64,000 bases of DNA from Asterias rubens (lineage: Eukaryota), in assembly GCF_902459465.1 (NCBI RefSeq), contig NC_047063.1, positions 744,001 to 808,000 of the forward strand, given 5' to 3'. The notes beneath the pieces were generated by a model. It saw only the letters and a program-made list of their open reading frames with translations, did not search any database and was not told where the DNA came from. Below, in pieces: positions 463-55,200 of this stretch (position 1 is the first letter of the stretch; each line of letters begins with the position of its first letter). Made by a program: the position numbers and the translations under genes.

Positions 463-577
463 TTAAAGATAAGGTCAGGGCAGACAGCTTTAAATTCACA
501 ATTTAAAATCTGTCATGCAACACTATTAATTAATACTTCACCCGCTATAGAAATCAATAACCGATAAATCTACTCAC

Positions 578-3481: not shown

Positions 3482-3519
<38 letters not shown>

Positions 3520-6500
3520 CACATTTCTTTTTTTTTTGAAAAAGGGTTATTTGAAAAGACCTCAGCTAAAACAATCTGAATGTCTTGTCTGTATATCTTG
3601 ACCAAAATGTTTAATTTATGTATCGTGTGTTTGAGCAGTAGAAAAAACAATGGATATTTGAAGAAAAAAAAATTAAGAATGGCGGCCATCTTGAAATAAA
3701 AAATAAAAAATAAAAAGCCCCTCCTCCTTCCTGTTTTTGAGAAACCCAGACGCTAAACATGTTTGTTTTTTTACTCGGCCTTATGCGATCAATATCTTTT
3801 AGTTCCTCAATCTTTTCAATCCTTTTACGTTTCCTGTATGTCTATTTAATGTGAGCCAACCCCTTTTTTAATGGCAAAACTCTGACTATTGCAAAGTATT
3901 TTTTTTTAATGTTCTGATTATCTCAATACTAATAACTTTACTTGTTTAGACTTAATGGTTTACCTTCTTTTCACAAAGGTCTAAACACAGATATTTGTGA
4001 TTCTACAAATACTATGTGACAAGTAAAATAATTCACATCCAGGTACTTTTTAAATACTCCGATTAGCCCGCCCTCATCGGCCGCAAGACGTCAGAGGGTC
4101 ACTCTTTCCTTTGACGTCGAAGACATAACATCATTTATATTTCTCCGTCTTTAAACACAGGTAATTACTATTCTATTTTCCATTTATTCTCTCCTAGATT
4201 TCACATAAATTCATTTTGCTGTGGAATGCTGATTGATCAATAAAGATATTAAATAACCTGGGTCTGATCAGGTAGATTTGTAGTCATGACTTGTAAACTT
4301 CTTTCAATTCCATTGGGAAGAAGGACTTCAGTATTCTGAGCCAGCAGCTGAGGGCAGGAACCCGGACCCTTGGGTGAAGACAAAGCTGGATTCTAAAGAA
4401 ATCACACCAGATAATTATTTACGAGAAATTATTTCCTTATTTTGAATTGTGTCAAGAACTTATCAACTCCATTAAAAAGATGTTTGAAGAGATAGGAATA
4501 GGATGTTCTTTTATGTATTACTTAAGGAAATTAAAGTGCTCAAATTAGTTTATAACTGGTAAATTTCAGCAACTCAAAAAAAGAAAACATCTTTGATCTT
4601 ACGTTTTGTCCTGTAATGATGATTTCATTGTCTCCTGAGCAAGTAGAACTAACATGAGTGCATCTATTCTCAAAGACACACCAATCACAGGCCCATTGAC
4701 TACCAACACAAGATACACAACTACAACAAACACAAATACAAAACAACAATATAAACAATTGGCAAAAGAAATACAACAAAATAAAAAATCTTAATAAAAA
4801 GTTATTTGAACAAAATTAAAGCTTTTTATTTTTACAAACCAAATTGCAACAAAGAAGAAGAAATTAATGTTCTTACGAAGTATGAGTGGAGCATTCATAG
4901 AAGTAGAAACTTGTATCCACAAAACTGACTGATGTTTCACTGGAATGGATGCTTAGTGTAACCTGAACAGCATCATCTGCAAAATGGAACATTCATAAAA
5001 AGTTGTATGTTTATTTTATTTTAACAACAACAATAGCAACAAATGGCCCTAGTTTAGTGTTTGACTTACCTCCTGGTTGAATTGGTGGTATCCTATTACC
5101 AGGTGGGGAGACACATCTAAGATCCTCATTAGTCTTTGTAGCTTGAGATACGTAGGATCCAAACCAACACTCATATGTCATGTTGGTCAGTAAGTCTGGT
5201 AACTGCTCTACACTCACAGTAATCTAGTAAATAATACAATTTGTAGCAAATAAGATACACAGTTGTCATAATTATAACATACAATTGAACATCTTGTATA
5301 TGAGCCTACAGCGTATATTAATTTTGATTTTTACCCATATACGCCGATGTGTTTTAGCACTGTATACTCATCAGTACTTACCCAAGTTCTGTTTAAAAAA
5401 ATCACAGGCATATTGCTCGGGTGGGATTCGAACCCACGACCTTTGGAATTCTAGAGCAGTATCATACCAACTAGACCACCGAGATTGCCCGGTGGCTAGA
5501 GGCAGTGCGAATCCTATGTTTAGCAGTGCAGCGAGTACTGCAAATGATATAATAGATGTTAAATTTGCATCGGGGATAAAGCGTAGTCTTAATTTTATGG
5601 TTCACACAGTTTAAATTAGACTTGGGGACTTGATTCTGTATTTCTGAGCATCTGACAATAGCTTTTGTTTACACACAAATAACTGCAAACTTTAAACGGT
5701 CAAAAAGAACTCTCAGGGGAAGCTTTTCTTGAGAGCGTTTGTGTCCATAGGCTGAGGGCTTGCGCCCCCAACTCAAACGACACCATCGCTACACGATTAA
5801 TAGGGTCATTTTTACCTAGTAAATTGTTTCTAAATAGTTCACCATTACAGAGTGAGCCTAAATAATTCACACTGTGAGTGAACCTGAAATTAGTGGCACA
5901 GATATAGGTGTACATGTATGTGAGAATAAAGGGAAGTGGGATATTCAGATCAAAAAGCCACTTAACCTAAATTCATAAAACCACAATCATGCAATATTGA
6001 TATCATTGCGGAAGAATGCCAACTTCTGCCAAGTAGTACTTCCTGTATTGGCAAGTTGTTTTGAGCCAAGCAGCTGTATGGAAATGCGCAAATGAAATGA
6101 ACATGTCGGTAAGCAGAAATACATTACTCTTACCTGTTGTTCTGTAACAGTGATTGGTAGATTGTTATAAGGATCCACATTGGTTATCTCAATACACTGT
6201 GCAGTATTGTAGTCTAACCATCGGGTAGACACATCAGGCATCTTGCATTCGGAATACAGGGTGCATCTATATAAATAAAAAATTAAACATTGATAACTCA
6301 ACCAACTGCTTGAAAAGAACCATAGTCAAAGACTCTACAGGGACTGTAAACACAGTTGTCAGAATGAATTTTCAGTGGATTTAAAAGAGAGCAAAATTAA
6401 AGCAGCTTTTTACCTGCAAGTTAAACAGTAAGCGCCGAGAATTTTCCATGTTTTCAATTCTGTTTGAGGAGTCGAAATCGGGGAGCCATCAGTTCGCGCG

Positions 6501-9500
6501 AGAGCAGTGATCTCGCAAGAGCGCTATCTCAGCGCGTGGGGCCGATTTAACGACTTGTCCACAAGTCTAGGATTTCTGTTTTCCTCTTTAAAAAATACTT
6601 TGAATAGCAAAACCTTGGCCATGAGACACAGTGCTGATTGGATCAATCGCAGGGATTCAGTGCTGGATGCTGGGTCTGATTGGACTTGCCTCCAAAACAT
6701 AATGGGGGAATACAATGTTTGAAGACTCTGGAGGCTACATATTTCCTTTATTACAATGCAAGTCCATAAAAGGGGATTACCCAATCACACATATGGCAGA
6801 ATTCCAGCATTTTGATACCACAGCCTGTTCTCGTTGTGTGGGAGAAACAAAGAATTGCACTGAGAGTGAATGCTGTGTGCCCGCCTCGCAGGTAAGTATG
6901 GGTGGCCTTTGCTCTGGTCATCCAATGGGTGCGTTCGTTTAGCTTCCCTGGGTTGACCCCTGTGTGTGGCGTTTTTTTTTTTCTTCCCAGGACGAACGTG
7001 GGTAGTTATCTGCACACGTTCGTCCTGGAAAAAGAAAACGCCACACGAAGCTAATCGAACGCACCCAATGTGACAAGAAAATACAAAATGGACATCGCCC
7101 GGCATGAATTAGGGAATACATGTATCCAGTGCCTGCTGGTCTAGTGCAGGGTATACAAACTCAGGTTCTCCATCATGTGTACTAGCCACAATTCAACACA
7201 ACATCTTATTCGTACAAGATACAATACTTACTGTCTTTGCAGAGTACACCAGCCACAGTATGGGTCTCCATCCATCCCTGCATTCGTACCAATACACGTC
7301 TCACACGTTGTATACTGACCACAATTCTCAACACGCATCTTCAAAAACTGTATTGTTCGAACGGAAAATAATTCAAAATATGAAAAAAAAGTAGTTAGGA
7401 ATTTCACATCCAGATGAAATAGAATAGAAATGTAGAATGATGAAAACTATTTTCTACTCCCTGCTGAATCTTTTAAGATCTTTCAAGGAAAAACGTAGAC
7501 AGTTTGACATTACATACTTATCATTAAAATGTACCTTTTGTTCAGTGAGTATGTACATCTCTCTTGTTGTATCATTAATCTTGACATCTTTAAGAACTGA
7601 TCCAGTAATATCAAGGTCTACTCTCTCATACAGTCTGGCTGAGGTCTTGCTCTGGATGTGAACCTGTAACACAGACAAAACAGAGGCTTGCTAGTTTTTA
7701 CATGTATCTATCCACCATTCATAAATACCCCGAAAAGTTTATTCGTTCTGATTGGCCAAAAGGAGATCACTAGGCTTGTTAAATGTGCAACCATAGTCAG
7801 AGTATGTCAAACTTGTGGCAAAGAGGGCGCAATTGGATTAGTGCCATGATTGTGCATATTTCATGAAGAGTTAAGTTGGTAGGTTGTTTAGCTCGTCCTG
7901 TGCATGTATGAAACTTGTGTCTAATAGTTTAAAATTTAACTGTGCAAGTTCGAAACTGGCGCAAGGAGCTACTATAGCACAAAACATGAAAAATTCAACA
8001 AGGACAGTTGAGGTAAGATGAGGCTTAACAGTGAGGTTTGTTCTGAAATTTTAATGAGTTTTGTTGACAATGGAAAGGTATTTATGAATGGGAAAAAAAG
8101 AAGGGTGACTCATAGTCTTGAATTTTCTTTTAAACCCTTCTAGGGCTGTGGCCATTCAATAAAGGGCCTCACCCTTATCACACAGTGACAACCCTGTCAG
8201 TTTGAAGTGAATGTTCAAAACCTTGTATTAATCTGTTATTCCCTTTAATAAAAGAAAGCATAATTGAATGAATTGACACATAATTCTGTATAAATAGCTT
8301 AAAAAGATGTGAATCATCTCATGAAAGCATTTAGTCTGGATTTCTAAGATTAGCAATAAAAATCGTGCTAAGCTTGAACTTTGAATCGGTTTCTTCTTTT
8401 GTGTTTTTTTAAGGTGTAAAAAAGTATTTTGTTCACAAAAACAGACTTACTTTTAAAAGCTCCCCACTCGAGTCAGATCCAATGATTGCTACAGTGTGGT
8501 TCATCTCAGTGGTTGTAATGATGGAGGACATCAGAGTGTCTGTAAATAAATGTATATTAAATATCAGACTATTACAGGCTAGATTTAACAACCATTTACT
8601 GATGAATTATATCACCCAGCCTTAGTAATATAGAATGTGGAATATAACAAAAAAATTGCTATTGAATCTTACAATATGAATAGCACCTGACTACATGAAT
8701 AGAAGGTACTTTGTTAGTGACAATAATAGTTTTTTCATGTGTATTGAATTTTCAAAAAGCAAACGCTACTGAAAACTAATAAGCCTATGACAGTTTATTA
8801 AAAACATTGCTTTGTTTCATTTGAACATGAGATTTCCAACACAGCGATGGATGCATATTGCATGCTTTTATCAATATAAGGTTTGAGCCATCAGCAACAG
8901 AATGACACAGATACCCATCTGGACTAACCTAGAATTAGAAGAATTTAAAGTTGTTTCTAATATAGGGCAAATGATTTTCAGCCATCGCGGAAAACAGACG
9001 GAACTCGCAGAATTCGCCCTTTGAAACGGAAAACGGGATTTTCAAGAGAAAAATAAGGTTGTTTTTAGTTTCATGTTCTTTAGGCCAAAGCTATTGCAAT
9101 TGCATTTTTTACAAAGGATCTTTTTGTTAAACTAAAAAAAGCATCAGAAATCAGACCATTAAAAAGTACGATATCGTAACCGTGGATCATTCTATTCAAC
9201 TTGATTAGTATATGCAATTTCCATCCAGTACACACGTTGTTAACATGCGGAGGGCATTATTCAAGGCACCTTTTTTACATATTTTTTTTCACCCAAAATT
9301 GCATTTTCTCCCTCCCTTTTACCAACAATTATACACAAACTAGCTTACCTATGATCTATAAGAACACATACAATGTTTTTTCATCTCGGAAAGGTCTAAA
9401 ATAAAACCGTAAACTTTCAACATTCTGTCGCCAAAGCCATAGACTTGGTCCCAAGTCTGTGATTATGCTGAAATAGCGCCCTATTGTGGTAACACTTCCG

Positions 9501-11744
9501 CCATTAGCCTACAATGCATGCAATGTGGCTGATGCAGAGAAACAACCGCACAGTTTTTAGACTTGGAATCAAGTCTATCATGTCATGTGCATTGATACTG
9601 CAGCCACAGTGCAACGGCTGTTACATGTTTCTGTTGCATCGATCAGCAGTATACAAATTAATAAAATAAAATAAAATATTCTTTTTTAGTATTTGTTTTT
9701 TAAATGTCAGTTCAAATTAACATTTAGGAAGTCAGCAGTGCAACTTATCCAAAATTTAGGTTTATAAGTGTCTCCCTGGGTATTAAACAACCTTTCATCT
9801 AATTAAAAAACATGAAACAGAATTTGTTGTGCCTGAAACGGAATTCATGTTTTTGTCAAACGGAATTAGCACTTTTCTGAAACGGAAAATCATTGGCCCT
9901 ACTAATACCTGATAGTTCCAGAACAGCAATGGATGATTTTACATTAATGCCTTTAGCATACTTGTATGGTTGGATGTCCCCTTCAATAGGATGACACAGA
10001 AATGGATCTGGACCAACCTAGACAAGAAAAATATCAATGATTAGTCTCAATCCATACAAATTTAGTTTTTACAACAGCTCTAACCAAAGGGAGCAAGACA
10101 ATACAAAAACAAACGCAACTGTATTATTCTGTCCAAGACAAAAATAACTATTAAAAATATCATGATTTATGTTTTCCTTGTGTTTGAGGAAACCAATAAT
10201 ATTTTTACAAAAGTAACATTGAAATATTATTGTTGTTTAGTTAATTAACTTAATTGAGAAATAACTAATACAATTAGGATATCTGTATATACTATACATA
10301 AAACAAATTGTCAATTTCCTGGTTTAGAGACATGTCAAACAATATAATAAAAACACATACTTGTTACAAGTGGACAATTGTATGATTATTTTCAAATTTA
10401 TCATTTAAAGTCGTCTTTCTGGTCTTACAAATGTTTTAGGAAAGAAAAATTTAAATTCTTTATAATATTGCTTTAATTAAACCTTCCTTTAGGCTTCACT
10501 GAAGGTATCTTTGATTTCCCTCATCTTAATTTTGCACATAACTTGAGACCCAAACTTAGTGGCCATATACTCACTGATAATGTATTACATCTGGATCCGA
10601 ACAAGTACTTCACTAAGTAGCCATCTCCATCTTCAATACATCCCCTGACTGCTTCCTTGAAGGCATCTAAAATATCACTCATCTTATACACACACAATGC
10701 TGACTGATCAATAGGTACATCACTAGTCCCATCAGCTCCTTCATTCTTAGCAAACACAGCATACAACACCATGTCCTCAGCATTCAAACCTAATGATACA
10801 GCAAGATCCTGACCTGCTGGGCCAATATGAGCAGCTTGTACCAAACTGTACACACTACCATCTGATCCTTGGCATTGTAGGGTGATTTCTGTGTAAGAGT
10901 CAAAGGATGGACTGGTCTGACAGACTCTGTTCATTTTAGAAACAAAGACATTGGAATCAAAATTCTCCTCTTGAGAAGTGATGAAGTATGTGAATCCTTC
11001 ATATGAGAAACCAGCTACATAATTGAACGGGAATGGGTTCTGTTTATAAGAATTATCAAATGCAGTAAACGAAGAATACCCTGTGCCTGATGGAGATATC
11101 AACAACACATCTGTACTATTAAGGATTCTTCTGCTGACTGGTGGGATTTGTGTATACCCAACCTCCTCATTGGAGTAAGTCACAGCTACATACAACCAGT
11201 CTCCTCCATCTGGCCCTGGTCCCATTGGTCCATCAGTTCCTGGTGCAATCAAACTCACAGTAGACAACTCTCCAAAACCAGCAACACTAGACTCTGGTTG
11301 AAACAACACACCAGTCAAATCATCTGGATTCCTGAACTGACACTTTCCTTCATTCTCACTTCCACATGTAATCAACCGATTCTGATTATCTAATATCAGG
11401 ATTTTATTGTAGTTGGTGAATATATCACATCTATCCTCTCCTAGTTCTTGACATGTACTAACATTCTGTAGCAGATTCAATGAACTATTTAGTCTGTATA
11501 AGTAGTTGACAGCTCCAACATACACAGCTCCATCAGGGCCAGATAGAGTGAAATGATTGAATTTAGCATTGTGGTTACCAGATGGATCATTGAGAGGTCT
11601 AGGAGGATGAGGATTACTGAATGAAGCAATGTGATAAGATGACAGATCTCCTTGCCATTCAGCTGATACAACACTACTTAATAATCCCAGCAGGATCAAA
11701 CATACAGCCAACCAGATGGTTACATGGCTCCTCTGGGCCTCCAT
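578..11744 (-). CDS. Inverted plexin-family paralog (one V exon + constant exons); 3' part continues beyond position 1
   Basis: Exons on the minus strand: 11744-10575 (V), 10017-9909 (A), 8539-8451, 7663-7535, 7347-7232, 6266-6134, 5223-5070, 4976-4877, 4720-4603, 4392-4258, 3214-3119, 2587-2479, 759-578. The constant exons match the plus-strand exons in length and phase (109, 89, 129, 116, 133, 154, 100, 118, 135, 96, 109, 182), with no stop seen. Completeness outside the window is unknown. Confidence 0.88.
851..1813. mobile_element. Non-autonomous TIR element, TAGGGC termini, 6-bp TSD (hAT-like)
   Basis: TIRs tagggccactgattttccg / cggaaaatcagtggcccta; flanking duplication caaata; homologous along its length to 8963-9901 in the opposite orientation. 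Confidence 0.85.
5335..5600 (-). mobile_element. Dispersed SINE-like repeat with tRNA-like A/B boxes
   Basis: The minus strand reads gtctagttggt..ctgctctagaatt..gtcgtgggttcgaatccc; related copies at 1-110, about 12690-12870 and about 19930-20090. Confidence 0.7.
8827..8928 (-). pseudogene. Decayed exon B homolog in the inverted paralog
   Basis: Starts VSPDGYLCHSV after a ttctag acceptor. The ASIAVLEIS end is in a different frame, the length is about 102 nt instead of 109, and the donor is degenerate (gttcaa). Confidence 0.7.
8963..9901. mobile_element. Second copy of the 6-bp-TSD TIR element, inserted between exons A and B of the inverted paralog
   Basis: Termini tagggcaaatgattttc / gaaaatcattggcccta; TSD ctaata at 8957-8962 and 9902-9907. 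Confidence 0.85.
10575..11744 (-). CDS. Variable-type Sema exon of the inverted paralog, intact
   Basis: 390 open codons from MEAQRSH; donor gtgagt at 10574; strong acceptor (tttgtttgcatttcaatgttacag) ending at 11813, about 70 nt upstream of the ATG. Confidence 0.9.
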
Positions 11745-33182: not shown

Positions 33183-34349
33183 ATGGAGGCCCAGAGGAGC
33201 CATATGACCATCTTGTTGGCTGTATGTTTGATCCTGCTGGGATTATTAAGTAGTGTTGTATCAGCTGAATGGCAAGGAGATCTGTCATCTTATCACATTG
33301 CTTCATTCAGTAATCCTCATCCTCCTAGACCTCTCAATGATCCATCTGGTAACCACAATGCTAAATTCAATCATTTCACTCTATCTGGCCCTGATGGAGC
33401 TGTGTATGTTGGAGCTGTCAACTACTTATACAGAGTGGATAGTTCATTGAATCTGCTACAGAATGTTAGTACATGTCAAGAACTAGGAGAGGATAGATGT
33501 GATACATTCACCAACTACAATAAAATCCTGATATTAGATAATCAGAATCGGTTGATTACATGTGGAAGTGAAAATGGAGGAAAATGTCAGTTCAGGAATC
33601 CAGATGATTTGACTGATGTGTTGTTTCAACCATACCCTAATGTTGCTGGTTTTGAAGAGTTGTCTACTGTAAGTTTGATTGCACCAGGAACTGATGGACC
33701 AATGGGACCAGGTCCAGATGGAGGAGATTGGTTGTATGTAGCTGTGACTTACTCCAATGAGGAGGTTGGGTATCCAGAAATCCCACCAGTCAGCAGAAGA
33801 GTCCTTAGTGCAGACGCATTGTTGGTATCCCCAGCAGGCACAGGGTTTTCTTCATTTACTGTGTTTGATACTTCCAATCTGAAGAATCCAATCCACATTA
33901 CATATGTAACTGGTTTCTCATATGATGGATTCACATACTTCATCACATTTCAAGAAGAGGATTTTTATTCCAATATCTTTGTTTCTAAAATGAACAGAGT
34001 CTGCCAGACCAGTCCAACATTTGACTCTTACACAGAAATCACCCTACAATGCCAAGGATCAGATGGTAGTGTGTACAAAATGGTACAAGCTGCTCATATT
34101 GGCCCAGCAGGTCAGGATCTTGCTGTATCATTAGGTTTGAATGCTGAGGACATGGTGTTGTATGCTGTGTTTGCTAAGAATGAAGGAGCTGATGGGACTA
34201 GTGATGTACCTATTGATCAGTCAGCATTGTGTGTGTATAAGATGAGTGATATTTTAGATGCCTTCAAGGAAGCAGTCAGGGGATGTATTCAAGATGGAGA
34301 TGACTACTCAGTGCAGCACTTGGAAGGATCCATCTGTCCATCATTATCA
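33183..34349 (+). CDS. Variable exon V1 (signal peptide + Sema domain N-terminal part), intact
   Basis: ATG at 33183 (MEAQRSHMTILLAVCLILLGLLSSVVSA, hydrophobic signal peptide). 389 open codons with plexin/Met-type Sema motifs (VYVGAVNYLYR, NYNKILILD, LITCGS, SKMNRVCQTSPTFDSYTEITLQC, SALCVYKM). Phase-0 donor gtgagt at 34350. Confidence 0.9.
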
Positions 34350-36156: not shown

Positions 36157-36545
36157 AGGCAAAGGACACTATTGGTAATTACTCAAAATAATCATAAAAC
36201 CTTTCTTGATAACGAGTAAATGGGGAGAAGTTGATAGTATACAACATTGTGACAAACAGCTCCCTCTGAAGTGACGTAGTTTTCGAGAAAGAAGTAATTT
36301 TACACGAATTTGATTTCGAGACCTCAGATTTATAGAACTTGAGGTATCTAAATCAAGCATCTGAAAGCCCACAACTTCGTGTGTGTGACAGGGGTGTTTT
36401 TTTTTCTTTCAGTAATATCTCGCAACTTCGACGACCGATTGAGCTGAAATTTCCCTCTTCTGGTCACTCAAAGTCCCTCGGGGGAATAGACGTACACTAG
36501 TTACCTCATTGCCAGTCAATATGTGTATAATAGTGTACAGTGTCT
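36157..36545 (+). mobile_element. Kolobok-like MITE upstream of V2
   Basis: TTAA on both flanks; the homologous site upstream of V4 (about 42315-42325) is empty. Confidence 0.85.
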
Positions 36546-36899: not shown

Positions 36900-38072
36900 A
36901 TGGAGGCCCAGAGGAGCCACGTAACCATCTTGTTGGCCGTATGTTTGATCCTGCTGGGATTATTCTTAAGTAGCGTTGTATCAGCTGAATGGCAAGGAGC
37001 TGTGTCATCTTATCACATTGCTTCATTCAGTAATCCTCATCCTCCTAGACCTCTCAATGATCCATCAGGTAACCACAATGCTAAATTCAATCATTTCACT
37101 CTGTCTGGCCCTGATGGAGCTGTGTATGTTGGAGCTGTCAACTACTTATACAGACTGGATATGTCATTGAATCTACTACAGAATGTTAGTACATGTCAAG
37201 AACTAGGAGAGGATAAATGTGATATATTCACCAACTACAATAAAATCCTGATATTAGATAATCAATATCGGTTGATTACATGTGGAAGTGAGAATGGAGG
37301 AAAGTGTCAGTTCAGGAATCTAGATGATTTGACTGATGTGTTGTTTCAACCAGGGTCTAATATTGCTGGTTTTGGAGAGTTGTCTACTGTGAGTTTGATT
37401 GCACCAGGAACTGATGGACCAATGGGAGATGGTCCAGATGGAGGAGATTGGTTGTATGTAGCTGTGACTTATGCTACTGAAGAGGTTGGGTATACAGAAA
37501 TCCCGCCGGTCAGCAGAATAATCCTTAGTACAGATGGGTTGTTGATATCTCCATCGGGCACAGGGTATTCTTCATCTACTGCATTTGATGTTTCCTATAC
37601 TCGTGATCCATTCCAAATAACGTATGTCGTCGGTTTCTCATATGATGGATTCACATACTTCGTCACATTTCAAAAAGAGGATCTTGGTTCCAATGTCTTT
37701 GTTTCTAAAATGAACAGAGTCTGTCAGACCAGTCCAACATTTGACTCTTACACAGAAATCACCCTACAATGCCAAGGATCAGATGGTAGTGTGTACAGTT
37801 TGGTACAAACTGCTCATATTGGCCCAGCAGGTCAGGATCTTGCTGTATCATTAGGTTTGAATGCTGAGGACATGGTGTTGTATGCTGTGTTTGCTAAGAA
37901 TGAAGGAGCTGATGGGACTAGTGATGTACCTATTGATCAGTCGGCATTGTGTGTGTATAAGATGAGTGATATTTTAGATGCCTTCAAGGAAGCAGTCAGG
38001 GGATGTATTCAAGATGGAGATGGTCACGCAGTGCAGTACTTTCAAGGATCCTTCTGTCCATCCTTCCCGATG
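36900..38072 (+). CDS. Variable exon V2 (signal peptide + Sema), intact
   Basis: ATG at 36900, 391 open codons, same framework as V1, phase-0 donor gtgagt at 38073. Confidence 0.9.
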
Positions 38073-39355: not shown

Positions 39356-40516
39356 ATGGATGCCCAGAGGAGCCACGTAACCATCTTGTTGGCTGTATGT
39401 TTGATCCTGCTGGGATTATTAAGTTGTGTTGTATCAGCTGAATGGCAAGGAGATCTGTCATCTTATCACATTGCTTCATTCAGTAATCCTCATCCTCCTA
39501 GACCTCTCAATGATCCATCTGGTAACCACAATGCTAAATTCAATCATTTCACTCTATCTGGCCCTGATGGAGCTGCGTATGTTGGAGCTGTCAACTACTT
39601 ATACAGACTGGATAGTTCGTTGAATCTGCTACAGAATGTTAGTACATGTCAAGAACTAGGAGAGGGTAGATGTGATATATTCACCAACTACAATAAAATC
39701 CTGATATTAGATAATCAGAATCGGTTGATTACATGTGGAAGTGAGAATGAAGGAAAGTGTCAGTTCAGGAATCCAGATGATTTAACTGATGTGTTGTTTC
39801 AACCAGTGCCTAATGTTGCTGGTTTTGGAGAGTTGTCTACTGTGAGTTTGATTGCACCAGGAACTGATGGACCAATGGGAGATGGTCCAGTTGGAGGAGA
39901 CTGGTTGTATGTAGCTGTGACTTACTCCGATGAGGTTTGGTGTATCCCACCAGTCAGCAGAAGAATCCTTAGTACAGACGGATTGTTAATATCCCCAGCA
40001 CCATACCCAGGATCGTCTTCATCTGTTGCATTGGGGTTTTCTTATAATCGCAATCCATTCCCAATAACGTATGTAACTGGTTTCTCATATGATGGATTCA
40101 CATACTTCATCACTAATCAAATGGAGGATTTTGGTTCCAATGTCTTTGTTTCTAAAATAAACAGAGTCTGTCAGACCAGTCCAACATTTGACTCTTACAC
40201 AGAAATCACCCTACAATGCCAAGGATCAGATGGTAGTGTGTACAGTTTGGTACAAGCTGCTCATATTGGCCCAGCAGGTCAGGATCTTGCTGTATCATTA
40301 GGTTTGAATGCTGAAGACATGGTGTTGTATGCTGTGTTTGCTAAGAATGAAGGAGCTGATGGGACTAGTGATGTACCTATTGATCAGTCAGCATTGTGTG
40401 TGTATAAGATGAGTGATATATTAGATGCCTTCAAGGAAGCAGTCAGGGGATGTATTCAAGATGGAGATGACTACTCAGTGCAGTACTTGGAAGGATCCAT
40501 CTGTCCATCATTACCA
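39356..40516 (+). CDS. Variable exon V3 (signal peptide + Sema), intact
   Basis: ATG at 39356, 387 open codons, phase-0 donor gtgagt at 40517. Confidence 0.9.
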
Positions 40517-42705: not shown

Positions 42706-43850
42706 ATGGAGGCCCAGAGGAGCCACGTAACCATCTTGTTGGCTGAATGTTTGATTCTGCTGGGATTATTAAGTAGTGTTGTATCAGCTGAATGGCAAGG
42801 AGATCTGTCATCTTATCACATTGCTTCATTCAGTAATCCTCATCCTCCTAGACCTCTCAATGATCCATCTGGTAACCACAATGCTAAATTCAATCATTTC
42901 ACTCTATCTGGCCCTGATGGGGCTGTGTATGTTGGAGCTGTCAACTACTTATACTAATTGGATAGTTCATTGAATCTGCTACAGAATGTTAGTACATGTC
43001 AAGAACTTGGAGAGGATAGATGTTATATATTCACCAACTACTTATATAGATATTAGATAATCAGAATCGGTTGATTACATGTGGAAGTGAGAATGGAGGA
43101 AAGTGTCAGTTCAGGAATCCAGATGATTTGACTGATGTGTTGTTTCAACCAGGGCCTAATGTTGCTGGTTTTGGAGAGTTGTCTACTGTGAGTTTGATTG
43201 CACCAGGAACTGATGGACCAATGGGAGATGGTCCAGATGGAGGAGACTGGTTGTATGTAGCTGTGACTTATTCTGCTGAGGTTGGGTATAGAGCAATCCC
43301 ACCAATATCAAGGCGAATTCTTAGTGAAGGATCTTTATTGGCAGCACTTGATGGTAACACATTTTCATCAGTTGTTCCCTTTTCTACACCGATACAAATA
43401 TCGTATAGATCTGCTTTTTCGTTTGGCGGCTTCACATACTTCATCACTTCTCAAAAGGAGGATTTTGGTTCAAATTTCTTTGTTTCTAAAATGAACAGAG
43501 TATGCCAGACTAGTGAATATTTGGATTCTTACACAGAAATCACCCTACAATGCCAAGGATCAGATGGTAGTGTGTACAGTTTGGTACAAGCTGCTCATAT
43601 TGGCCCAGCAGGTCAGGATCTTGCTGTATCATTAGGTTTGAATGCTGAGGACATGGTGTTGTATGCTGTGCTTGCTAAGAATGAAGGAGCTGATGGGACT
43701 AGTGATGTACCTATTGATCAGTCAGCATTGTGTGTGTATAAGATGAGTGATATTTTAGATGCATTCAAGGAAGCAGTCAGGGGATGTATTCAAGATGGAG
43801 ATGACTACTCAGTGCAGTACTTGCAAGGATCCATCTGTCCAGCATTACCA
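42706..43850 (+). pseudogene. Variable exon V4, disabled
   Basis: Premature TAA at 42955-42957 (tac taa where other copies have tac aga). A net -4 nt change near 43041 (ttatata replaces aataaaatcct) shifts the frame. The rest is open to donor gtgagt at 43851. Confidence 0.88.
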
Positions 43851-47097: not shown

Positions 47098-48150
47098 ATG
47101 GAAGCCCAGAGGAGCCACGTAACCATCTTGTTGGCCGTATGTTTGATCCTGCTGGGATTATTTAGAGGTGTTGTATCAGCTGAATGGCAAGGAGATCTGT
47201 CATCTTATCACATTGCGTCATTCAGTAATCCTCATCCTCCTAGACCTCTCAATGATCCATCTGGTAACCACAATGCTAAATTTAATCATTTCACTCTATC
47301 TGGCCCTGATGGGGCTGTGTATGTTGGAACTGTCAACTACTTATACAGACTGGATAGTTCATTGAATCTGCTACAGAATGTTAGTACATGTCAAGAACTA
47401 GGACAGGATAGATGTGATACATTCACCAACTACAATAAAATCCTGATATTAGATAATCAGAATCGGTTGATTACATGTAGAAGTGAGAATGTAGGAAAGT
47501 GTCAGTTCAGAAATCCAGATGATTTGACTGATGTGTTGTTTCGGCCAGGTGAAGGGACAAGCGGAACAGAACAGAACGTTGCTGGTTTTGGAGAGTTGTC
47601 TACTGTGAGTTTGATTGCACCAGGAACTGATGGATCAACTGGACCAGGGCCAGATGGAGGCGACTGGTTGTATGTAGCTGTGACTTACTCCAATGAGGTT
47701 GGGTATCGACATATCCCACCAGTCAGCAGAAGAGTCCTTAGTGCAGACGCATCGTTGATATCCCCATCAGGCACAGGGTATTCTCCATTTACTGCGTTTG
47801 ATATTTCTTATAAACAAAACGCAGTCCCATTTAACTATGTATCTGGTTTCTCATATGATGGATTCACATACTTCATCACTTCTCAGAAGGAGGATTCTGG
47901 TTCCAATGTCTTTGTTTCTAAAATGAACAGAGTCTGTCAGACCAGTCCAACATTTGCCTCTTACACAGAAATCACCCTTCAATGCCAAGGATCAGGTAGT
48001 GTGTACAGCTTGGTACAAGCTGCTCATATTGGCCCAGCAGGTCAGGATCTTGCTGTATCATTAGGTTTGAATGCTGAGGACATGGTGTTGTAATATGCTG
48101 TGTTTGCTAAGAATGAAGGAGCTGATGGGACTAGTGATGTACCTATTGAT
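47098..48150 (+). pseudogene. Variable exon V5, in-frame stop, 3' end lost by fusion to V6
   Basis: ATG at 47098. A 3-nt insertion gives ttg TAA tat gct (48091-48093) versus ttg tat gct in the other copies. After ..DVPID (48150) the sequence jumps to the RLDSSL position of another V copy. Confidence 0.85.
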
Positions 48151-49071
48151 AGACTGGATAGTTCATTAATCCTGATACAGAATGTAAGTACATGTCAAGA
48201 ACTAGGAGAGGATAGATGTGATATATTCACCAACTACAATAAAATCCTGATATTAGATAATCAGAATCGGTTGATTACATGTGGAAGTGAGAATGAAGGA
48301 AAGTGTCAGTTCAGGAATCCAGATGATTTGACTGATGTGTTGTTTCAACCAGGGTCTAATGTTGCTGGTTTTGGAGAGATGTCTACTGTATGTTTGATTG
48401 CACCAGGAACTGATGGACCAATGGGAGATGGTCCAGATGGAGGAGATTGGTTGTATGTAGCTGTGACTTATGCTACTGAAGAGGTTGGGTATACAGAAAT
48501 CCCGCCGGTCAGCAGAAGAATCCTTAGTACAGATGGGTTGTTGATATCTCCATCGGGCACAGGGTATTCTTCATCTACTGTATTTGATGTTTCCTATACT
48601 CGTGATCCATTCCAAATAACGTATGTCGTCGGTTTCTCATATGATGGATTCACATACTTCATCACATTTCAAAAAGAGGATATTGGTTCCAATGTCTTTG
48701 TTTCTAAAATGAACAGAGTCTGTCAGACCAGTCCAACATTTGACTGTCACACAGAAATCACCCTACAATGCCAAGGATCAGATGGTAGTGTGTACAGTTT
48801 GGTACAAGCTGCTCATATTGGCCCAGCAGGTCAGGATCTTGCTGTATCATTAGGTTTGAATGCTGAGGACATGGTGTTATATGCTGTGTTTGCTAAGAAT
48901 GAAGGAGCTGATGGGACTAGTGATGTACCTATTGATCAGTCAGCATTGTGTGTGTATAAGATGAGTGATATTTTAGATGCCTTCAAGGAAGCAGTCAGGG
49001 GATGTATTCAAGATGGAGATGACTACTCAGTGCAGTACTTGCAAGGATCCTTCTGTCCATCCTTCCTGATG
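48151..49071 (+). pseudogene. Variable exon V6, 5'-truncated V2-like copy fused to V5
   Basis: Lacks its own ATG and signal peptide. Variable islands are almost identical to V2 (YATEEVGYTEIPP..STDGLLISPSGTGYSSST.FDVSYTRDPFQITYVVGF). Donor gtgagt at 49072, and the downstream flank matches the V2 flank. Confidence 0.85.
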
Positions 49072-50269: not shown

Positions 50270-51576
50270 ATGGATGCCCAGAGGAGCCACGTAACCATCT
50301 TGTTGGCTGTACGTTTGATTCTGCTGGGATTATTAAGTAGTGATGTATCAGCTGAATGGCAAGGAGATCTGTCATCTTATCACATTGCTTCATTCAGTAA
50401 TCCTCATCCTCCTAGACCTCTCAATGATCCATCTGGTAACCACAATGCTAAATTCAATCATTTCACTCTATCTGGCCCTGATGGAGCTGTGTATGTTGGA
50501 GCTGTCAACTACTTATACAGACTGGATAGTTCATTGAATCTGCTACAGAATGTTAGTACATGTCAAGAACTAGGAGAGGAATGTGATATATTCACCAACT
50601 ATAATAAAATCCTGATATTAGATAATCAGAATCGGTTGATTACATGTGGAAGTGAGAACGAAGGAAAGTGTCAGTTCAGGAATCTAGATGATTTGACTGG
50701 TGTGTTGTTTCAACCAGGGCCTAATGTTGCTGGTTTTGGAGAGTCGTCTGTGGGTTTGATTGCACCAGGAACTGATGGACCAGTCGGACCAGGGGCCGAT
50801 TTCACAAAGATCTAAGATTGATCGTTACTGCAAATCAATCGTAGTTGCTAAGTAAAATGTGATGTCACAATACAAATCACTATGGTGATACTGACAATTT
50901 GTCTTGCGATGAATTTGATTGCTTTGTGAAATCGGCCCCAGGGCCAGATGGAGGAGATTGGTTGTATGTAGCTGTGACTTACTCCAATGAGGTTGGGTAT
51001 CAAGCAATCCCACCAGTCAGCAGAAGAATCCTTAGTAAAGAAAGGTTGTTGATATCACCATCAGGCCTGGGGGTTTCTTCATTTATTGCATTTGATGTTT
51101 CCAATCTTAAGACTCCAATCCACATTACATATGTATCTGGTTTCTCATTTGATGGTTTCACATACTTCATCACTTCTCAAGAGGAGGATTTTGGTTCCAA
51201 TATCTTTGTTTCTAAAATGAACAGAGTCTGTCAGACCAGTCCATCCTTTGACTCTTACACAGAAATCACCCTACAATGCCAAGGATCAGATGGTAGTGTG
51301 TACAGTTTGGTACAAGCTGCTCATATTGGCCCAGCAGGTCAGGATCTTGCTGTATCATTAGGTTTGAATGCTGAGGACATGGTGTTATATGCTGTGTTTG
51401 CTAAGAATGAAGGAGCTGATGGGACTAGTGATGTACCTATTGATCAGTCAGCATTGTGTGTGTATAAGATGAGTGATGTTTTAGATGCCTTCAAGGAAGC
51501 AGTCAGGGGATGTATTCAAGAAGGAGATGGTCACTCAGTGCACTACTTGGAAGGGTCATTCTGTAGTAGATTTCCA
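50270..51576 (+). pseudogene. Variable exon V7 (closest to the constant region), disrupted by a MITE
   Basis: ATG at 50270. A 146-bp insertion plus 3-bp duplication at 50793-50941 introduces TAA (50813-50815) and a frameshift. The downstream half is open to donor gtaagt at 51577. Confidence 0.88.
50793..50938. mobile_element. PIF/Harbinger-like MITE inside V7
   Basis: TIRs gggccgatttcacaaag / ctttgtgaaatcggccc; 3-bp TSD CAG. Removing it restores ggaccagggccagat as in the other V copies. Confidence 0.88.
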
Positions 51577-52140: not shown

Positions 52141-52249
52141 ATTGGTCCAGATATGTTTTTGTGTCATGTTTTTGAAGGGGACACTATAATATACAGGAAT
52201 GCTAAAGGCATCAGTGTAACAGCATCCAATGCTGTACTGGAACTATCAG
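52141..52249 (+). CDS. Alternative constant exon A (109 nt)
   Basis: tctag acceptor; IGPDMFLCHVFEGDTIIYRNAKGISVTASNAVLELS+G; donor gtacat; phase 0 to phase 1. Confidence 0.8.
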
Positions 52250-55200
52250 GTACATCAAATGAGACATCAAATTTTCTGTTCTTCTATTTCTAGGTCAGTC
52301 CAGATATGTTTCTGTGTCATCATTTTGAAAATAGTAACCCAGTATACAAGTATGCTAAAGGAATTGATGTAACTTCATCAAATGCTGTACTGGAACTTTC
52401 AGGTATTAATAAGATACTGCATTACCTAAACAATCAAAATGTTCTGGTTTCAATTTAAAAGGGCAGTTAAACATCGACTCTCATCGCAATCAAATTTTTA
52501 ACAGTCTTAAACGCTTGTTTTATTTTGACTGCTCACTTTCCTCTGTGCAATTGTATTTGATAGTTAGTCTTCTTGATACAAATTATCAGTAAGTAAATTT
52601 TAAAAATATTTAAAGGCAGTGGACACTATTGGTAATTACCCAAACAAATTATTAGCATAAACCTTACTTGGTAACGAGAGGCTGAGAGTATAAAACATTG
52701 CTATAAACGGCTCCCTCTGAAGTAACGTAGTTTTCGAGAAAGAAGTAATTTTCCATGAATTTGATTTCAAGACCTCAGAATTAGATTTTGAGGTCTCGAA
52801 ATCAAGCATCTGAAAGCACACAACTTCATGTGACAAGGGTGGTATTTTTCTCTCATAGTTATCTCGCAACTCAATTGAGTTCAAACTATCACAGGTCCGT
52901 TGTTTTATGCATATGTGAGAAGACTGTTCTTTGACAATTACCCTTAGTGTCAAGTGTCTTTAAAGTGTTGTCCCCTGTGTGTTTGCAAGTTAAATGTTTT
53001 TTTGATAGTTTTAACTTGTTCTCTTTTTTACAGGACCATAAAGCTGTTGAGCTGATATTAAGTATCCTTTAAAAATATGGTTTTTTTTTTAATAAATTAA
53101 TGTACATTGTTTTAATATTGTCATTTCAAGACACTCTGATGTCCTCCATCATTACAACTACTGAGATGACCCACACTGTAGCTATCATTGGAACTTACTA
53201 CAGTGGGGAACTTTTAAAGGTAAGTATATTAATTTTGTTAATGTATATTTCTTTCATTTGTTTCTTGCATCAATAAGAGGATGCTTCCATCTTGGCGTTT
53301 GTGCAATTGGCAGCTTCCAGACCAAATCAAATAAACAAAACTGAAATTGTTATCATCCATCACCTTTAGAAGTAATTCATTATTCTTTCCTTGGAAAATG
53401 TGGGTAGGAACTACTAGGCGGGTAAATACATTTAACGCAATTCCAAGTATACATAGAAAGTTAACACAAACAAATAAAAACTTGGGTGGGTTTAAAATAT
53501 GAAACTTTAAAACACTGCTAATTATTGACTGTTGTGGGTCTCAAGACCGGTCTCCCCCTCGGACCTTCAGGTCTTGGTCTCGGATTTCGACTACAACACT
53601 GAACGTCTAACCACTCCTTATTTACAAGTGTTTGACCATAAATTATTATTGAAAATCAACCCGCTTACAACCACAAACTTTACCGTAAAAGAATATATTT
53701 TAAAAATTTACACACAAACATGCACACGCAGCAATGTTTCCGCCTTCTGGAAACAGTGATATGGAGCAAAAGGAAGGGACAGAAAACAGACAGAAGATGA
53801 AAACATTGAACAAAGGAAAGTGATTTCAAAAGGACAAAGGAAGGGTGGGGTATAAGGACTTTGCAAGTGTCAAACACAAACTTTACAATGATGACCTGTA
53901 ACTTTGGTATAACAAATGACAGCACAAATCTATGATTCAAGATTAAACATTATCCCAGGTTAACTATTCATATTATGCAAGATGGACCCATTGTATGCCT
54001 ATCTTTAAATTGTTGTGTTACAGGTTCACATCCAGAGCAAGACCTCAGCCAGACTGTATGAAAGAGTAGACCTTGATATTACTGGATCAGTTCTTAAAGA
54101 TGTCAAGATTAATGATACAACAAGAGAGATGTACATACTCACTGAACAAAAGGTACAATATATAAAGATGCAAGGACCATGCAAATGTTATTTTTTAATT
54201 TACCCCAAGCATATAATTTGACTTCATCTTTTTAAATATGTTTTGATTTGGACTGTATAGTTTCTGAAGATGCGGTTTGAGAATTGTGGTCAGTATACAA
54301 CGTGTGAGACGTGTATTGGTACGGATGCAGAGATGGATGGAGACCCATACTGTGGCTGGTGTACTCTGCAAAGACAGTAAGTATTGTATCTTGATTGGTT
54401 AACAATGCATGTTGAGAGTTATTACATATGCAGGGAGGGATGGAAACGTCAGCTGAATTAACAAATTTGGATCACCTCAAAAATAACTCTGTATGTATAT
54501 TATTAATACCTGTTTAGATGTACCCTGTATTCTGACTGCAAGATGCCTGATGTGTCTACGCGATGGTTAGCCTACAATACTGCACAGTGTATTGAGATAA
54601 CCAATGTGGATCCTTATAACAATCTACCAATCACTGTCACAGAACAACAGGTAAGAGTAACTGCTTACTGACTTTTGCATTTCCATACAGCTGGTTGGCA
54701 CAAACAATTGCTAAACACAGGTTCTGAGTATTGCTTAGCACAAATGGACGTTCCTCCAAGATGCTATTAAGATTACATAATTGTGACTTGATGGCTTGCT
54801 GTACTGAATGTCTCCTTCAGCCTCCCCTCTTTCTCTCAAATCCACCTGTATACCAATTGTATATTTACTAGGTTACTGTGAGTGTAGAGCAGTTACCAGA
54901 CTTACTGACCAACATGACATATGAGTGTTGGTTTGGATCCTACGTATCTCAAGCTACAAAGACTAATGAGGATCTTAGATGTGTCTCCCCACCTGATAAT
55001 AGAATACCACCAATTCAACAAGGAGGTAAGTCAAACGCTAAACTAGGGCCATTTGTTGCTATTGTTGTTAAAATGAAATAAACATACAACTTTTTATGAA
55101 TGTTCCATTTTCCAGATGATGCTGTTCAGGTTACACTGAGCATCCATTCCAGTGAAACACCAGTCAGTTTTGTGGATACAAGTTTCTACTTCTATGAATG

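What the first reader, a model, noticed from the sequence alone, without database searches (positions are those of the whole stretch)
33620..34349. Hypervariable islands in a homogenised framework, apparently on the ligand-binding face of the Sema propeller
Seen: long stretches are essentially identical among all eight V copies even at silent sites (e.g. SYHIASFSNPHPPRPLNDPSGNHNAKFNHF and AAHIGPAGQDLAVSLGLNAEDMVLYAV). Differences, including indels, cluster in about five islands: after LFQP (YPN / GSN / VPN / GEGTSGTEQN / ESS); after AVTY (SNEEVGYPE / ATEEVGYTE / SDEVWC / SAEVGYRA); the SRR..L-to-GFS segment (SADALLVSPAGTGFSSFTVFDTSNLKNPIHI vs STDGLLISPAPYPGSSSSVALGFSYNRNPFPI vs SEGSLLAALDGNTFSSVVPFSTPIQI); the FIT..SN loop; and the exon end (DGDDYSVQHLEGSICPSLS vs DGDGYLVKYLFGSRCNTLS). 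Established, from memory of Sema6A-PlexinA2 structural work: interface residues around D193, F221 and A396 lie in the loops after YFPT, before FDIFYIYGF and at the end of the CY..GEG extrusion. Inference: my by-eye alignment puts islands 2, 3 and 5 on those loops, implying diversified ligand specificity under positive selection. Coordinates given are for V1.
Basis: partly seen in the sequence, partly recalled or inferred. Interest (0 to 1): 0.87.

Follow-up and report, generated by a model that had tools for sequence, protein, structure and literature searches.

The report
Variable loop patches in starfish plexin exons
In the starfish Asterias rubens, repeated copies of the first coding exon of a plexin receptor are nearly identical except for one block of about 95 codons and the exon end, which encode loops where plexins are known or thought to bind ligands; the pattern is real and is shared with other sea stars, but it looks like old sequence that escaped copy-correction between repeats, not unusually fast protein change.

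Summary
The window is an Asterias rubens plexin locus with eight copies of a 389-codon signal-peptide plus Sema (blades 1-5) exon. Variable sites are strongly clustered (index of dispersion 5.8 against 0.78 in permutations). The framework is 94-98% identical at nucleotide level, although the flanking introns of different copy classes cannot be aligned. The same profile recurs in nine intact copies of A. amurensis (rho 0.68) and in Patiria miniata paralogs (rho 0.66).

Synonymous divergence rises along with non-synonymous divergence, about 10-fold. dN/dS in blade 3-4 loops (0.62) equals that of loops elsewhere (0.68). The main island has omega 0.49, significantly below 1. The islands are therefore old sequence that escaped exon-restricted gene conversion, and cassettes have been swapped between copies.

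Site models support only a small positively selected class (about 3% of codons; codons 151 and 199). Alignment places the PlexinA2 D193, F221 and A396 equivalents inside islands 2, 3 and 5, and an AlphaFold model puts most island residues in blade 2D-4D loops and the post-extrusion-helix segment. No coordinates were available to test which face they lie on.

Four of the eight copies are broken, and one belongs to an inverted neighbouring gene. The closest analogue is regional gene conversion in clustered protocadherins. The scan's first-stage notes had already flagged this locus.

The parts
33183..34349 (+). V1: intact 389-codon variable first coding exon. It encodes the signal peptide, Sema blades 1-5 and the start of the extrusion, and ends at a phase-0 GTGAGT donor.
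   Evidence: ORF and donor. Pfam Sema and PDB plexin-A hits. AlphaFold pLDDT 88.3, Foldseek TM 0.71 to Drosophila PlexA.
33741..34028 (+). Central un-homogenised block of V1 (codons 187-282; strands 3B to 4D and their loops).
   Evidence: Tree length 1.84 against 0.16 for the framework. pS 0.26-0.28 in both loops and strands over codons 149-283, which include this block. 4-fold-site divergence 0.17-0.22 against 0.036.
33624..33647 (+). Island 1 (codons 148-155, 2D-3A loop, after LFQP). It holds codon 151, a candidate positively selected site.
   Evidence: Loop 149-161 has dN/dS 2.06 (CI 0.78-7.6). NEB P=0.96 at codon 151. V5 carries a 7-codon insertion here.
33699..33719 (+). Small island in the 3A-3B loop (codons 173-179).
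   Evidence: pN 0.12. pLDDT 57 in the model. Rozbesky et al. 2019 state that the blade-3 3A-3B and 3C-3D loops of class 2 semaphorins align with the MET-HGF beta interface (PMC6695400).
33759..33788 (+). Island 2 (codons 193-202, 3B-3C loop, after AVTY). It holds the PlexinA2 D193 equivalent (residue 195) and codon 199.
   Evidence: Alignment to PlexinA2. NEB P=0.97 at codon 199. Segment omega 0.55.
33801..33920 (+). Island 3 (codons 207-246: end of strand 3C, the long 3C-3D-4A loop region, and strand 4A). It holds the PlexinA2 F221 equivalent (residue 222). Two deep structural classes exist, a long form and a short form with a 5-residue deletion.
   Evidence: Omega 0.49, significantly below 1 (2dL 15.5). 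The short-form clade has bootstrap 100 and includes V4 together with five A. amurensis copies. pLDDT is below 50 at residues 217-219.
33945..33974 (+). Island 4 (codons 255-264, end of strand 4B and the 4B-4C loop; the 'FIT..SN' loop).
   Evidence: pN 0.09-0.10. Codon 258 has NEB P=0.71.
34299..34349 (+). Island 5 (codons 373-389, after the extrusion helix and up to the splice donor). It holds C385 and the PlexinA2 A396 equivalent (about residue 388).
   Evidence: Omega 1.33, not significant. NG86 dN/dS 0.95. Profile alignment of the Cys. A396 interface role.
10575..11744 (-). Vm: intact V exon of a second, inverted plexin paralog. Its constant exons lie at 10017..560 on the minus strand.
   Evidence: tblastn with A. 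planci plexin. 100% match to the N-terminus of A. rubens XP_033647296.1, 1960 aa.
36900..38072 (+). V2, an intact V exon. It is annotated in RefSeq as a stand-alone 392-aa 'plexin-A2-like' gene.
39356..40516 (+). V3, an intact V exon.
42706..43850 (+). V4, a broken V exon (TAA at codon 85, 4-nt deletion near codon 113). It is the only A. rubens copy in the window with the short-form central block.
47098..49071 (+). V5 (truncated, with an inserted in-frame TAA at 48094-48096) fused at 48150/48154 to 5'-truncated V6.
50270..51576 (+). V7, a V exon interrupted by a MITE at about 50797-50942 (16-nt terminal inverted repeats, CCAGG target duplication).
52141..52402 (+). Duplicated 109-nt exons A (52141-52249) and B (52294-52402), which follow the V exons and continue the extrusion.
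   Evidence: Splice sites read. A- and B-type exons are used alternatively in A. amurensis RefSeq isoforms X2 and X1.

Best explanation
The V exons are alternative 5' coding exons of tandem echinoderm plexin-B-class genes. They are old duplicates whose coding sequence has been homogenised by exon-restricted gene conversion, except for two parts: one block of about 95 codons (strands 3B-4D with their loops) and the last ~17 codons (after the extrusion helix).

These two parts retain old, diverged sequence lineages, some clearly older than the split of the two Asterias species. They are occasionally swapped between copies as cassettes.

They encode one sector of the Sema propeller. That sector includes the positions aligned to PlexinA2 semaphorin-contact residues. 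Each V exon therefore most likely gives the receptor a different ligand-binding surface on a common scaffold.

What is shown: the clustering of variation, the excess of both silent and replacement divergence, the cassette mosaicism, the conservation of the pattern across sea stars, and the location mainly in loops (the largest island also spans strand 4A).

What is inferred: that selection keeps the blocks diverse, that they set ligand specificity, and that a few codons (151, 199) are under positive selection.
For: - Framework identity is 94-98% for all pairs, although flanks of different classes are unalignable.
- Island pS is 0.27 against 0.077 in the framework. 4-fold divergence is 0.17-0.22 against 0.036.
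- dN/dS is the same in blade 3-4 loops and in other loops, 0.62 against 0.68, with about 10 times more divergence.
- Segment omegas are 0.45-0.55.
- Incongruent blocks: V6 against aL1a has p=0.000 at the exon end with a 93% identical downstream flank, but p=0.161 in the central block. V3 against aL1b has 0.000 against 0.205.
- A deep long/short dimorphism is shared by both species.
- The same variability profile appears in A. amurensis (rho 0.68) and in Patiria miniata (rho 0.66).
- All 13 unbroken copies keep an open frame and a phase-0 donor.
- RefSeq isoforms of the A. amurensis ortholog start with different V exons.
- Loops that vary family-wide outside blades 3-4 are invariant here.
- D193, F221 and A396 equivalents fall inside islands.
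- Constant exons of the two paralogs in the window are also a 78-98.7% patchwork.
Against: - GC3 is not raised in the framework (0.31 against 0.34 in the central block). That signature of biased gene conversion, used for protocadherins, is absent.
- Frameworks do not cluster by species, and within-species divergence equals between-species divergence. Homogenisation is therefore not demonstrably ongoing.
- Four of the seven copies in the + gene are broken.
- RNA reads gave no V1-specific coverage and no V-to-A/B junction in A. rubens.
- No 3D coordinates were available, so 'binding face' rests on sequence alignment and loop assignment.
- The variable loops lie on both faces of blades 3-4.
Confidence: 0.66

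Rival explanations
1. The islands are hypervariable because positive (diversifying) selection, or a locally raised mutation rate, drives rapid amino-acid change on the ligand-binding face.
For: - Site models prefer a class with omega above 1: M2a vs M1a 2dL 8.5, p=0.014; M8 vs M7 p=0.0014; M8 vs M8a p=0.0035.
- Codons 151 and 199 have posterior above 0.95.
- The 2D-3A loop has dN/dS 2.06 and the exon end 0.95-1.33.
Against: - Silent divergence is raised as much as replacement divergence.
- Omega of the largest island is 0.49, significantly below 1.
- dN/dS in blade 3-4 loops equals that of other loops.
- Only about 3% of codons fall in the selected class.
- The LRTs use branch lengths fixed from M0 and remain exposed to residual recombination.
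- The flanking introns are at least as diverged as the islands, so no rate acceleration is needed.
Confidence: 0.15
2. This is a neutral by-product. Conversion tracts simply stop where divergence is already high, and loops tolerate change, so the islands carry no specificity function. The array is a decaying set of partial duplicates.
For: - Island dN/dS is no higher than in other loops.
- Four A. rubens copies are pseudo-exons.
- V repertoires are not 1:1 between congeners; the nearest cross-species central-block p is 0.13-0.18.
- Expression in the sampled RNA runs is low.
Against: - Omega is below 1 within the block, which shows each variant is constrained.
- 13 copies stay intact with their donors.
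- Other loops that are equally variable family-wide (codons 29-58, 139-148, 329-348) are fully homogenised.
- The same sector is variable in Patiria, a different order of sea stars.
- Annotated isoforms use alternative V exons.
Confidence: 0.17
3. This is an assembly artefact. Collapsed or chimeric assembly of near-identical repeats creates the apparent mosaic.
For: The V5-V6 fusion and the hybrid flanks of V7 are the kind of structure that misassembly can produce. No DNA reads were laid across them.
Against: The island-and-framework pattern is reproduced in nine intact copies of an independent chromosome-level assembly of another species. It is also reproduced in Patiria proteins.
Confidence: 0.02

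Closest known systems
Clustered protocadherins (regional gene conversion in variable exons; Noonan et al. 2004, Wu 2005, Yu et al. 2007 PMC1852091)
   Same: Both are tandem variable 5' exons spliced to shared constant exons. Part of each variable exon is homogenised even at silent sites, while the recognition-determining part (EC2-EC3 in protocadherins) escapes and stays diverse.
   Different: The protein family and fold differ: a Sema beta-propeller rather than cadherin repeats. The un-homogenised part here is an internal block plus the exon end, not one end of the exon. There is no GC3 rise in the converted part. V numbers are small (3-7 per gene) and several copies are broken. The protocadherin papers report diversifying selection in EC2-EC3, which is only weakly seen here.
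Echinoderm plexin-B / Met-LP expansion (Junqueira Alves et al. 2019, PMC6374515)
   Same: It is the same gene clade. The nearest named relatives are A. planci 'plexin-B-like' and P. miniata proteins with a plexin ectodomain and a kinase tail. That paper reports expansion of plexins and of secreted Sema-SI/SP ligands in a starfish.
   Different: In the passages found, the paper counts genes. No mention of arrays of alternative Sema-encoding exons, their homogenised framework or localised variability was found.
PlexinA2-Sema6A and Drosophila PlexA-Sema1b head-to-head complexes (3OKY/3AL8, 6FKM)
   Same: The V1 model superposes on these plexin Sema domains (TM 0.67-0.71). The A396 contact position aligns to the exon-end island.
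   Different: Sequence identity is 25-28%. The ligand of the starfish protein is unknown. The variable loops lie on both propeller faces of blades 3-4 and also include loops that correspond to the MET-HGF beta contact.
UGT1A-type multiple variable first exon clusters (PMC1885805)
   Same: Variable first exons, reportedly each with its own upstream region, are joined to common exons, and the variable exon encodes the substrate- or ligand-recognising part.
   Different: UGT1A is an enzyme, not a receptor. I did not read that paper beyond its abstract.

Membership tests
Plexin (Sema-PSI-IPT receptor with plexin cytoplasmic domain) | N-terminal seven-bladed Sema domain related to plexin/MET | tested here: met
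   Pfam PF01403 at 29.8 bits, above the 23.7 cutoff. Profile against PDB: PlexA E=3.9e-130, PlexinA4/A2 about 1e-99. Foldseek TM 0.71.
Plexin (Sema-PSI-IPT receptor with plexin cytoplasmic domain) | PSI and IPT domains, a transmembrane helix and a plexin-type cytoplasmic region downstream in the same gene | tested here: met
   tblastn with A. planci plexin maps the exons from 52270 to 62838. These include the TM segment at 62074-62202 and the juxtamembrane 'MPFVSHRDYATNMLF' at 62716-62838. The rest of the cytoplasmic domain lies beyond the window.
Variable-first-exon cluster with regional gene conversion (protocadherin type) | Several tandem variable exons, each able to splice to one shared constant region | tested here: inconclusive
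   All intact V copies end at a phase-0 GT donor. RefSeq isoforms of the A. amurensis ortholog begin with aL1a or aL1c, and those of the neighbouring gene with aL3a or aL3b. No junction reads were obtained for A. rubens.
Variable-first-exon cluster with regional gene conversion (protocadherin type) | Part of the variable exon is homogenised at silent sites while the flanks are diverged | tested here: met
   Framework identity is 94-98% and 4-fold divergence is 0.036, while flanks of different classes are unalignable.
Variable-first-exon cluster with regional gene conversion (protocadherin type) | Raised GC3 in the converted region | tested here: not met
   GC3 is 0.31-0.32 in the framework against 0.34 in the central block.
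Positively selected hypervariable recognition loops | dN/dS above 1, or clearly above comparable regions, in the variable segments | tested here: not met
   Omega is 0.45-0.55 in segments 148-282 and 1.33 (not significant) at the exon end. Blade 3-4 loops give 0.62 against 0.68 for other loops.
Positively selected hypervariable recognition loops | A class of individual codons with omega above 1 by site-model likelihood-ratio tests | tested here: inconclusive
   M2a vs M1a p=0.014 and M8 vs M8a p=0.0035. About 3% of sites fall in the class, with codons 151 and 199 the clearest. This is an approximate in-house implementation on 13 sequences, with recombination only partly handled.
Semaphorin-binding surface of plexins | Variable residues coincide with residues that contact the ligand in solved complexes | tested here: inconclusive
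   The A396 equivalent lies in the exon-end island and its contact role is documented. The D193 and F221 equivalents lie in islands 2 and 3, but their contact role could not be verified. No coordinates were available for distance measurement.

The most novel reading that the evidence does not exclude
Sea stars may use arrays of alternative Sema-domain exons as a recognition-diversity system built on a plexin, comparable to protocadherins or Dscam. Each cell or cell type would choose one V exon and so display a distinct ligand-binding sector. The expanded echinoderm-specific secreted semaphorins would be the matching ligands. Broken V copies would serve as a reservoir of cassettes, copied by gene conversion into the functional exons.
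Probability: 0.12. Interest if true: 0.85.

Novelty: new member of a known kind. Interest (0 to 1): 0.55.

Why it matters
Plexins are normally single-form receptors whose ligand specificity is fixed per gene.

Here the ligand-binding domain is encoded by interchangeable exons. These exons differ almost only in one sector of the propeller, and this arrangement is conserved from Asterias to Patiria. If the exons are used as alternatives, one gene can produce receptors with different binding surfaces on an otherwise identical body.

That would give a concrete handle on two questions. The first is why echinoderms expanded both plexins and secreted semaphorins. The second is how specificity is encoded in blades 3-4 and the extrusion.

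It also adds a non-cadherin, non-immunoglobulin example of the 'homogenised scaffold, preserved recognition patch' mode of evolution.

Tried and rejected
- **Single-sequence AlphaFold** of Patiria P0158 failed (pLDDT 31) and wasted one of two jobs.
- **Interface residues.** I searched the held literature for PlexinA2 contact residues. Only A396 could be documented. Janssen et al. 2010 is not held.
- **RNA evidence**. No run holds more than 49% of V1's words. At 97% or more likeness, reads cover only the framework parts of V1. No V-to-A/B junction was listed. Expression of this gene is too low in the runs sampled, and both read-laying runs are used.
- **GC3** as a conversion signature was negative.
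- **Species-specific clustering of frameworks**, the classic sign of concerted evolution, was not seen.
- **One-to-one orthologs of the central blocks** between the two Asterias species were not found among the nine copies fetched.
- **Generic loop tolerance** as the whole explanation was rejected. Loops that are equally variable family-wide outside blades 3-4 are invariant here.
- **Recent duplication** as the cause of framework identity was rejected, because the flanks of different classes do not align.
Full report
**What is there.**
The window comes from Asterias rubens. The V1 ORF matches a protein on a 25.66-Mb contig whose other proteins carry that species' name. The nearest named relatives outside the genus are Patiria miniata and Acanthaster planci 'plexin-like' proteins.

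tblastn finds eight copies of a ~389-codon exon that encodes a signal peptide and most of a Sema domain.
- V1 (33183-34349), V2 (36900-38072) and V3 (39356-40516) are intact.
- V4 has a stop at codon 85 and a 4-nt deletion.
- V5 has an inserted TAA, stops at codon 346, and is fused to V6, which begins at codon 85.
- V7 is split by a ~146-nt MITE.

The eighth copy, Vm (11744..10575, minus strand), is the first coding exon of a second, inverted plexin gene. Its constant exons run from 10017 to 560, and it matches A. rubens XP_033647296.1 over 390 residues.

Downstream of V7 lie the duplicated 109-nt exons A and B. After them come further Sema exons, PSI and IPT exons, a transmembrane exon and the start of a plexin cytoplasmic domain.

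I projected a codon alignment onto V1. It shows 262 variable nucleotide sites of 1167. In 30-nt bins the index of dispersion is 5.77, against 0.78 on average and 1.67 at most in 10,000 permutations.

Smoothed replacement diversity defines islands at codons 148-155, 173-179, 193-202, 207-246, 255-264, 277-282 and 373-389.

Outside the islands every pair of copies is 94.0-98.1% identical at nucleotide level. Inside them identity is 65-83%, apart from V2-V6 at 96.6%.

**The framework is homogenised, not young.**
Upstream and downstream flanks fall into classes. Within a class they are 73-96% identical. Between classes BLAST finds nothing, and Vm's flanks match almost nothing either. The copies are therefore old duplicates whose exon sequence has been made alike, which is the signature of exon-restricted gene conversion.

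The same patchiness extends to the constant exons of the two paralogs in the window, which range from 78% to 98.7% identity exon by exon.

**Replication in other sea stars.**
Three loci of A. amurensis chromosome CP134953.1 (29.17-29.30 Mb) carry nine further V copies. All are intact and all have phase-0 GT donors. They sit in three groups of three, each ahead of a full plexin gene.

The window's + gene is the ortholog of the L001 gene. Its non-exonic sequence differs by 5.9-7.2%.

The replacement-diversity profile of the nine A. amurensis copies correlates with that of the four intact A. rubens copies (Spearman 0.68). Eight Patiria miniata paralogs show the same profile at protein level, with the maximum at V1 positions 189-248 and 369-389 (Spearman 0.66).

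**Is it positive selection?**
Mostly not.

Silent and replacement diversity rise together along the exon (rho 0.61-0.70). Even with islands defined by pN, which biases the ratio upwards, pooled dN/dS is 0.67 (CI 0.50-0.91) against 0.33 in the framework.

I then used the AlphaFold secondary structure as an independent partition:

| Region | pS | pN | dN/dS |
|---|---|---|---|
| Blade 3-4 loops | 0.282 | 0.191 | 0.62 |
| Blade 3-4 strands | 0.261 | 0.107 | 0.36 |
| Loops elsewhere | 0.023 | 0.016 | 0.68 |
| Strands elsewhere | 0.051 | 0.016 | 0.31 |

The variable sector thus has about ten times more change of both kinds at an unchanged ratio. Conserved strands inside the block, such as ITYVTGFSYDGFTYF, keep their amino acids but have pS of 0.28-0.40. 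This shows that codons ~187-282 escape homogenisation as one block.

Maximum-likelihood omega was estimated per segment on the 13 intact sequences with segment-specific trees:

| Codons | Omega |
|---|---|
| 29-147 | 0.32 |
| 148-186 | 0.45 |
| 187-206 | 0.55 |
| 207-246 | 0.49 (2dL 15.5 against omega=1) |
| 247-282 | 0.50 |
| 283-370 | 0.72 |
| 371-389 | 1.33 (not different from 1) |

Site-class models share parameters over these partitions. They prefer a small selected class. M2a against M1a gives 2dL 8.5 (p=0.014), with 3.1% of sites at omega 3.6. M8 against M7 gives p=0.0014, and M8 against M8a gives p=0.0035. Posterior probabilities exceed 0.95 only at codons 151 and 199, with 258 at 0.71 and 108 at 0.52.

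These are my own implementations, with relative branch lengths fixed from M0. They should be read as suggestive only.

**Old lineages and cassette swaps.**
The central-block tree has a 100%-supported deep split. On one side is a short form with a 5-residue deletion: V4 plus five A. amurensis copies. On the other side is the long form. The dimorphism therefore predates the species split.

Blocks disagree with one another. V6 and aL1a are identical over the exon end and share a 93% identical downstream flank, yet differ by 16% in the central block. V3 and aL1b show 0% against 20.5%. V4 and aL3b show the reverse, 13% central against 25% at the end.

Among the nine copies fetched, no A. rubens central block has a near-orthologous partner in A. 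amurensis. The nearest p is 0.13-0.18.

Frameworks do not cluster by species. Their divergence is the same within species (0.019-0.026) as between species (0.023). At 4-fold sites it is 0.036, about half the orthologous intron divergence. I cannot fully explain that last point.

GC3 is not raised in the framework.

**Where the islands sit.**
An AlphaFold model of V1, built on a 131-sequence alignment, has mean pLDDT 88.3 and pTM 0.85. Its best structural match is Drosophila PlexA (TM 0.71, rmsd 2.9 Å), followed by PlexinA4, PlexinA2 and MET.

From the strand order I assign the islands as follows:
- Codons 148-155 fall in the 2D-3A loop.
- Codons 173-179 fall in the 3A-3B loop.
- Codons 193-202 fall in the 3B-3C loop.
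- Codons 207-246 cover the end of strand 3C, the long 3C-3D-4A connection (pLDDT below 50 at 217-219) and strand 4A.
- Codons 255-264 fall in the 4B-4C loop.
- Codons 277-282 fall in the 4C-4D loop.
- Codons 373-389 fall in the segment after the extrusion helix (354-375).

The variable residues thus occupy one sector, blades 3-4 plus the extrusion, on both propeller faces.

Loops that vary strongly across the plexin family but lie in blades 1, 2 or 5 (positions 29-58, 139-148, 329-348) are invariant among the Asterias copies. Generic loop tolerance therefore does not explain the distribution.

**Relation to known ligand contacts.**
In the HMMER alignment to 3al8_B, adding 30 to the chain index reproduces a D at 193 and an F at 221. 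These align to V1 residues 195 and 222, inside islands 2 and 3.

The profile alignment puts V1 C385 opposite the conserved Cys three residues before A396, which places the A396 equivalent at about residue 388. A396 is described as a surface residue that directly contacts Sema6A, and the A396E mutation abolishes binding (PMC4308982, PMC4938514).

I could not confirm the contact role of D193 and F221 in the held papers.

Rozbesky et al. 2019 state that the blade-3 A-B and C-D loops of class 2 semaphorins align with the main MET-HGF beta interface. The corresponding blade-3 loops of V1 are also variable here. This clade includes receptors with a plexin ectodomain and a kinase tail. An HGF-like mode of binding is therefore not excluded. 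Because no model coordinates are returned by the tools, I could not compute distances to a docked ligand.

**Are the V exons used?**
Public annotation of A. amurensis gives isoforms of the orthologous gene that begin with aL1a (with either a B-type or an A-type 109-nt exon) or with aL1c. Isoforms of the neighbouring gene begin with aL3a or aL3b.

Other copies, including A. rubens V2, are annotated as stand-alone short genes.

In A. rubens RNA runs, coverage of this locus is very low. Reads at 97% or more likeness cover only the framework parts of V1, and no V-to-A/B junction was listed. Usage in A. rubens therefore remains open.

**Comparison with what is known.**
Expansion of plexins, Met-like receptors with plexin ectodomains, and secreted semaphorins in a starfish has been reported at the level of gene counts (PMC6374515). 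I found no description of arrays of alternative Sema exons or of their localised variability.

The evolutionary mode matches clustered protocadherins. There, regional gene conversion homogenises part of each variable exon even at silent sites, while EC2-EC3 escape and carry the diversity (PMC1852091).

I therefore file this as a new member of a known kind. The first-stage notes of this scan had already flagged the locus architecture, the mosaicism, the A/B exons and the broken V7. I re-derived each of these here.

**Verdict.**
The reading as a localised, probably ligand-facing diversity patch is plausible. The claim of positive selection is reduced to a few candidate codons. 'Hypervariable' is better replaced by 'not homogenised'.

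Noticed in passing
window 50797-50942: A MITE-like insertion of about 146 nt splits V7. It has 16-nt terminal inverted repeats (GGCCGATTTCACAAAG) and a CCAGG target duplication. The same element has very high word depth in RNA contigs.
   Followed up: partly
window 48094-48154: V5 carries an inserted in-frame TAA and is then joined in frame, after codon 346, to V6 starting at codon 85. This looks like an unequal-recombination product, or possibly a misassembly. It was not checked with DNA reads.
   Followed up: no
window 36128-36679, 49394-49787, 52546-52939: These are short interspersed repeats with very high RNA-seq depth on both strands and many unrelated loose ends. They are presumably high-copy transposable elements in the spacers and in the intron after exon B.
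   Followed up: no
window 560-10064 (-) versus 52093-60305 (+): Constant exons of the two inverted plexin paralogs form a patchwork. Some exons are 96-98.7% identical (54010-54157, 54851-55226, 57158-57295, 57924-58129). Others are 78-81% identical (the A/B exon, 54515-54793, 55462-56008). The minus-strand gene seems to have a single A/B-type exon (10064-9906).
   Followed up: partly
window 33183-34349 (framework parts): 36-49% of V1's 31-mers occur in RNA runs under four organism labels. In addition, 4-fold-site divergence of the framework between A. rubens and A. amurensis (0.036) is about half the orthologous intron divergence (0.059-0.072). This may indicate constraint on silent sites.
   Followed up: partly
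L001 7674-13600; L002 10001-17192; L003 4104-11152: A. amurensis has three clusters of three intact V exons ahead of three full plexin genes within 125 kb. RefSeq isoforms use different V exons and mutually exclusive A-type or B-type exons. The middle copies are annotated as separate short genes.
   Followed up: partly
window 49535-51704 versus L001 9267-10531 and 12955-13728: V7's upstream region and 5' half match the aL1b unit (96.5%). Its 3' half and downstream flank match the aL1c unit (89%). V7 therefore looks like a deletion or recombination hybrid of two ancestral V units.
   Followed up: no
window 34211: RNA contigs of runs X1 and X3 match V1 from 34211 onward but continue upstream into unrelated sequence (a loose end of 171-255 nt). 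The source was not identified.
   Followed up: no
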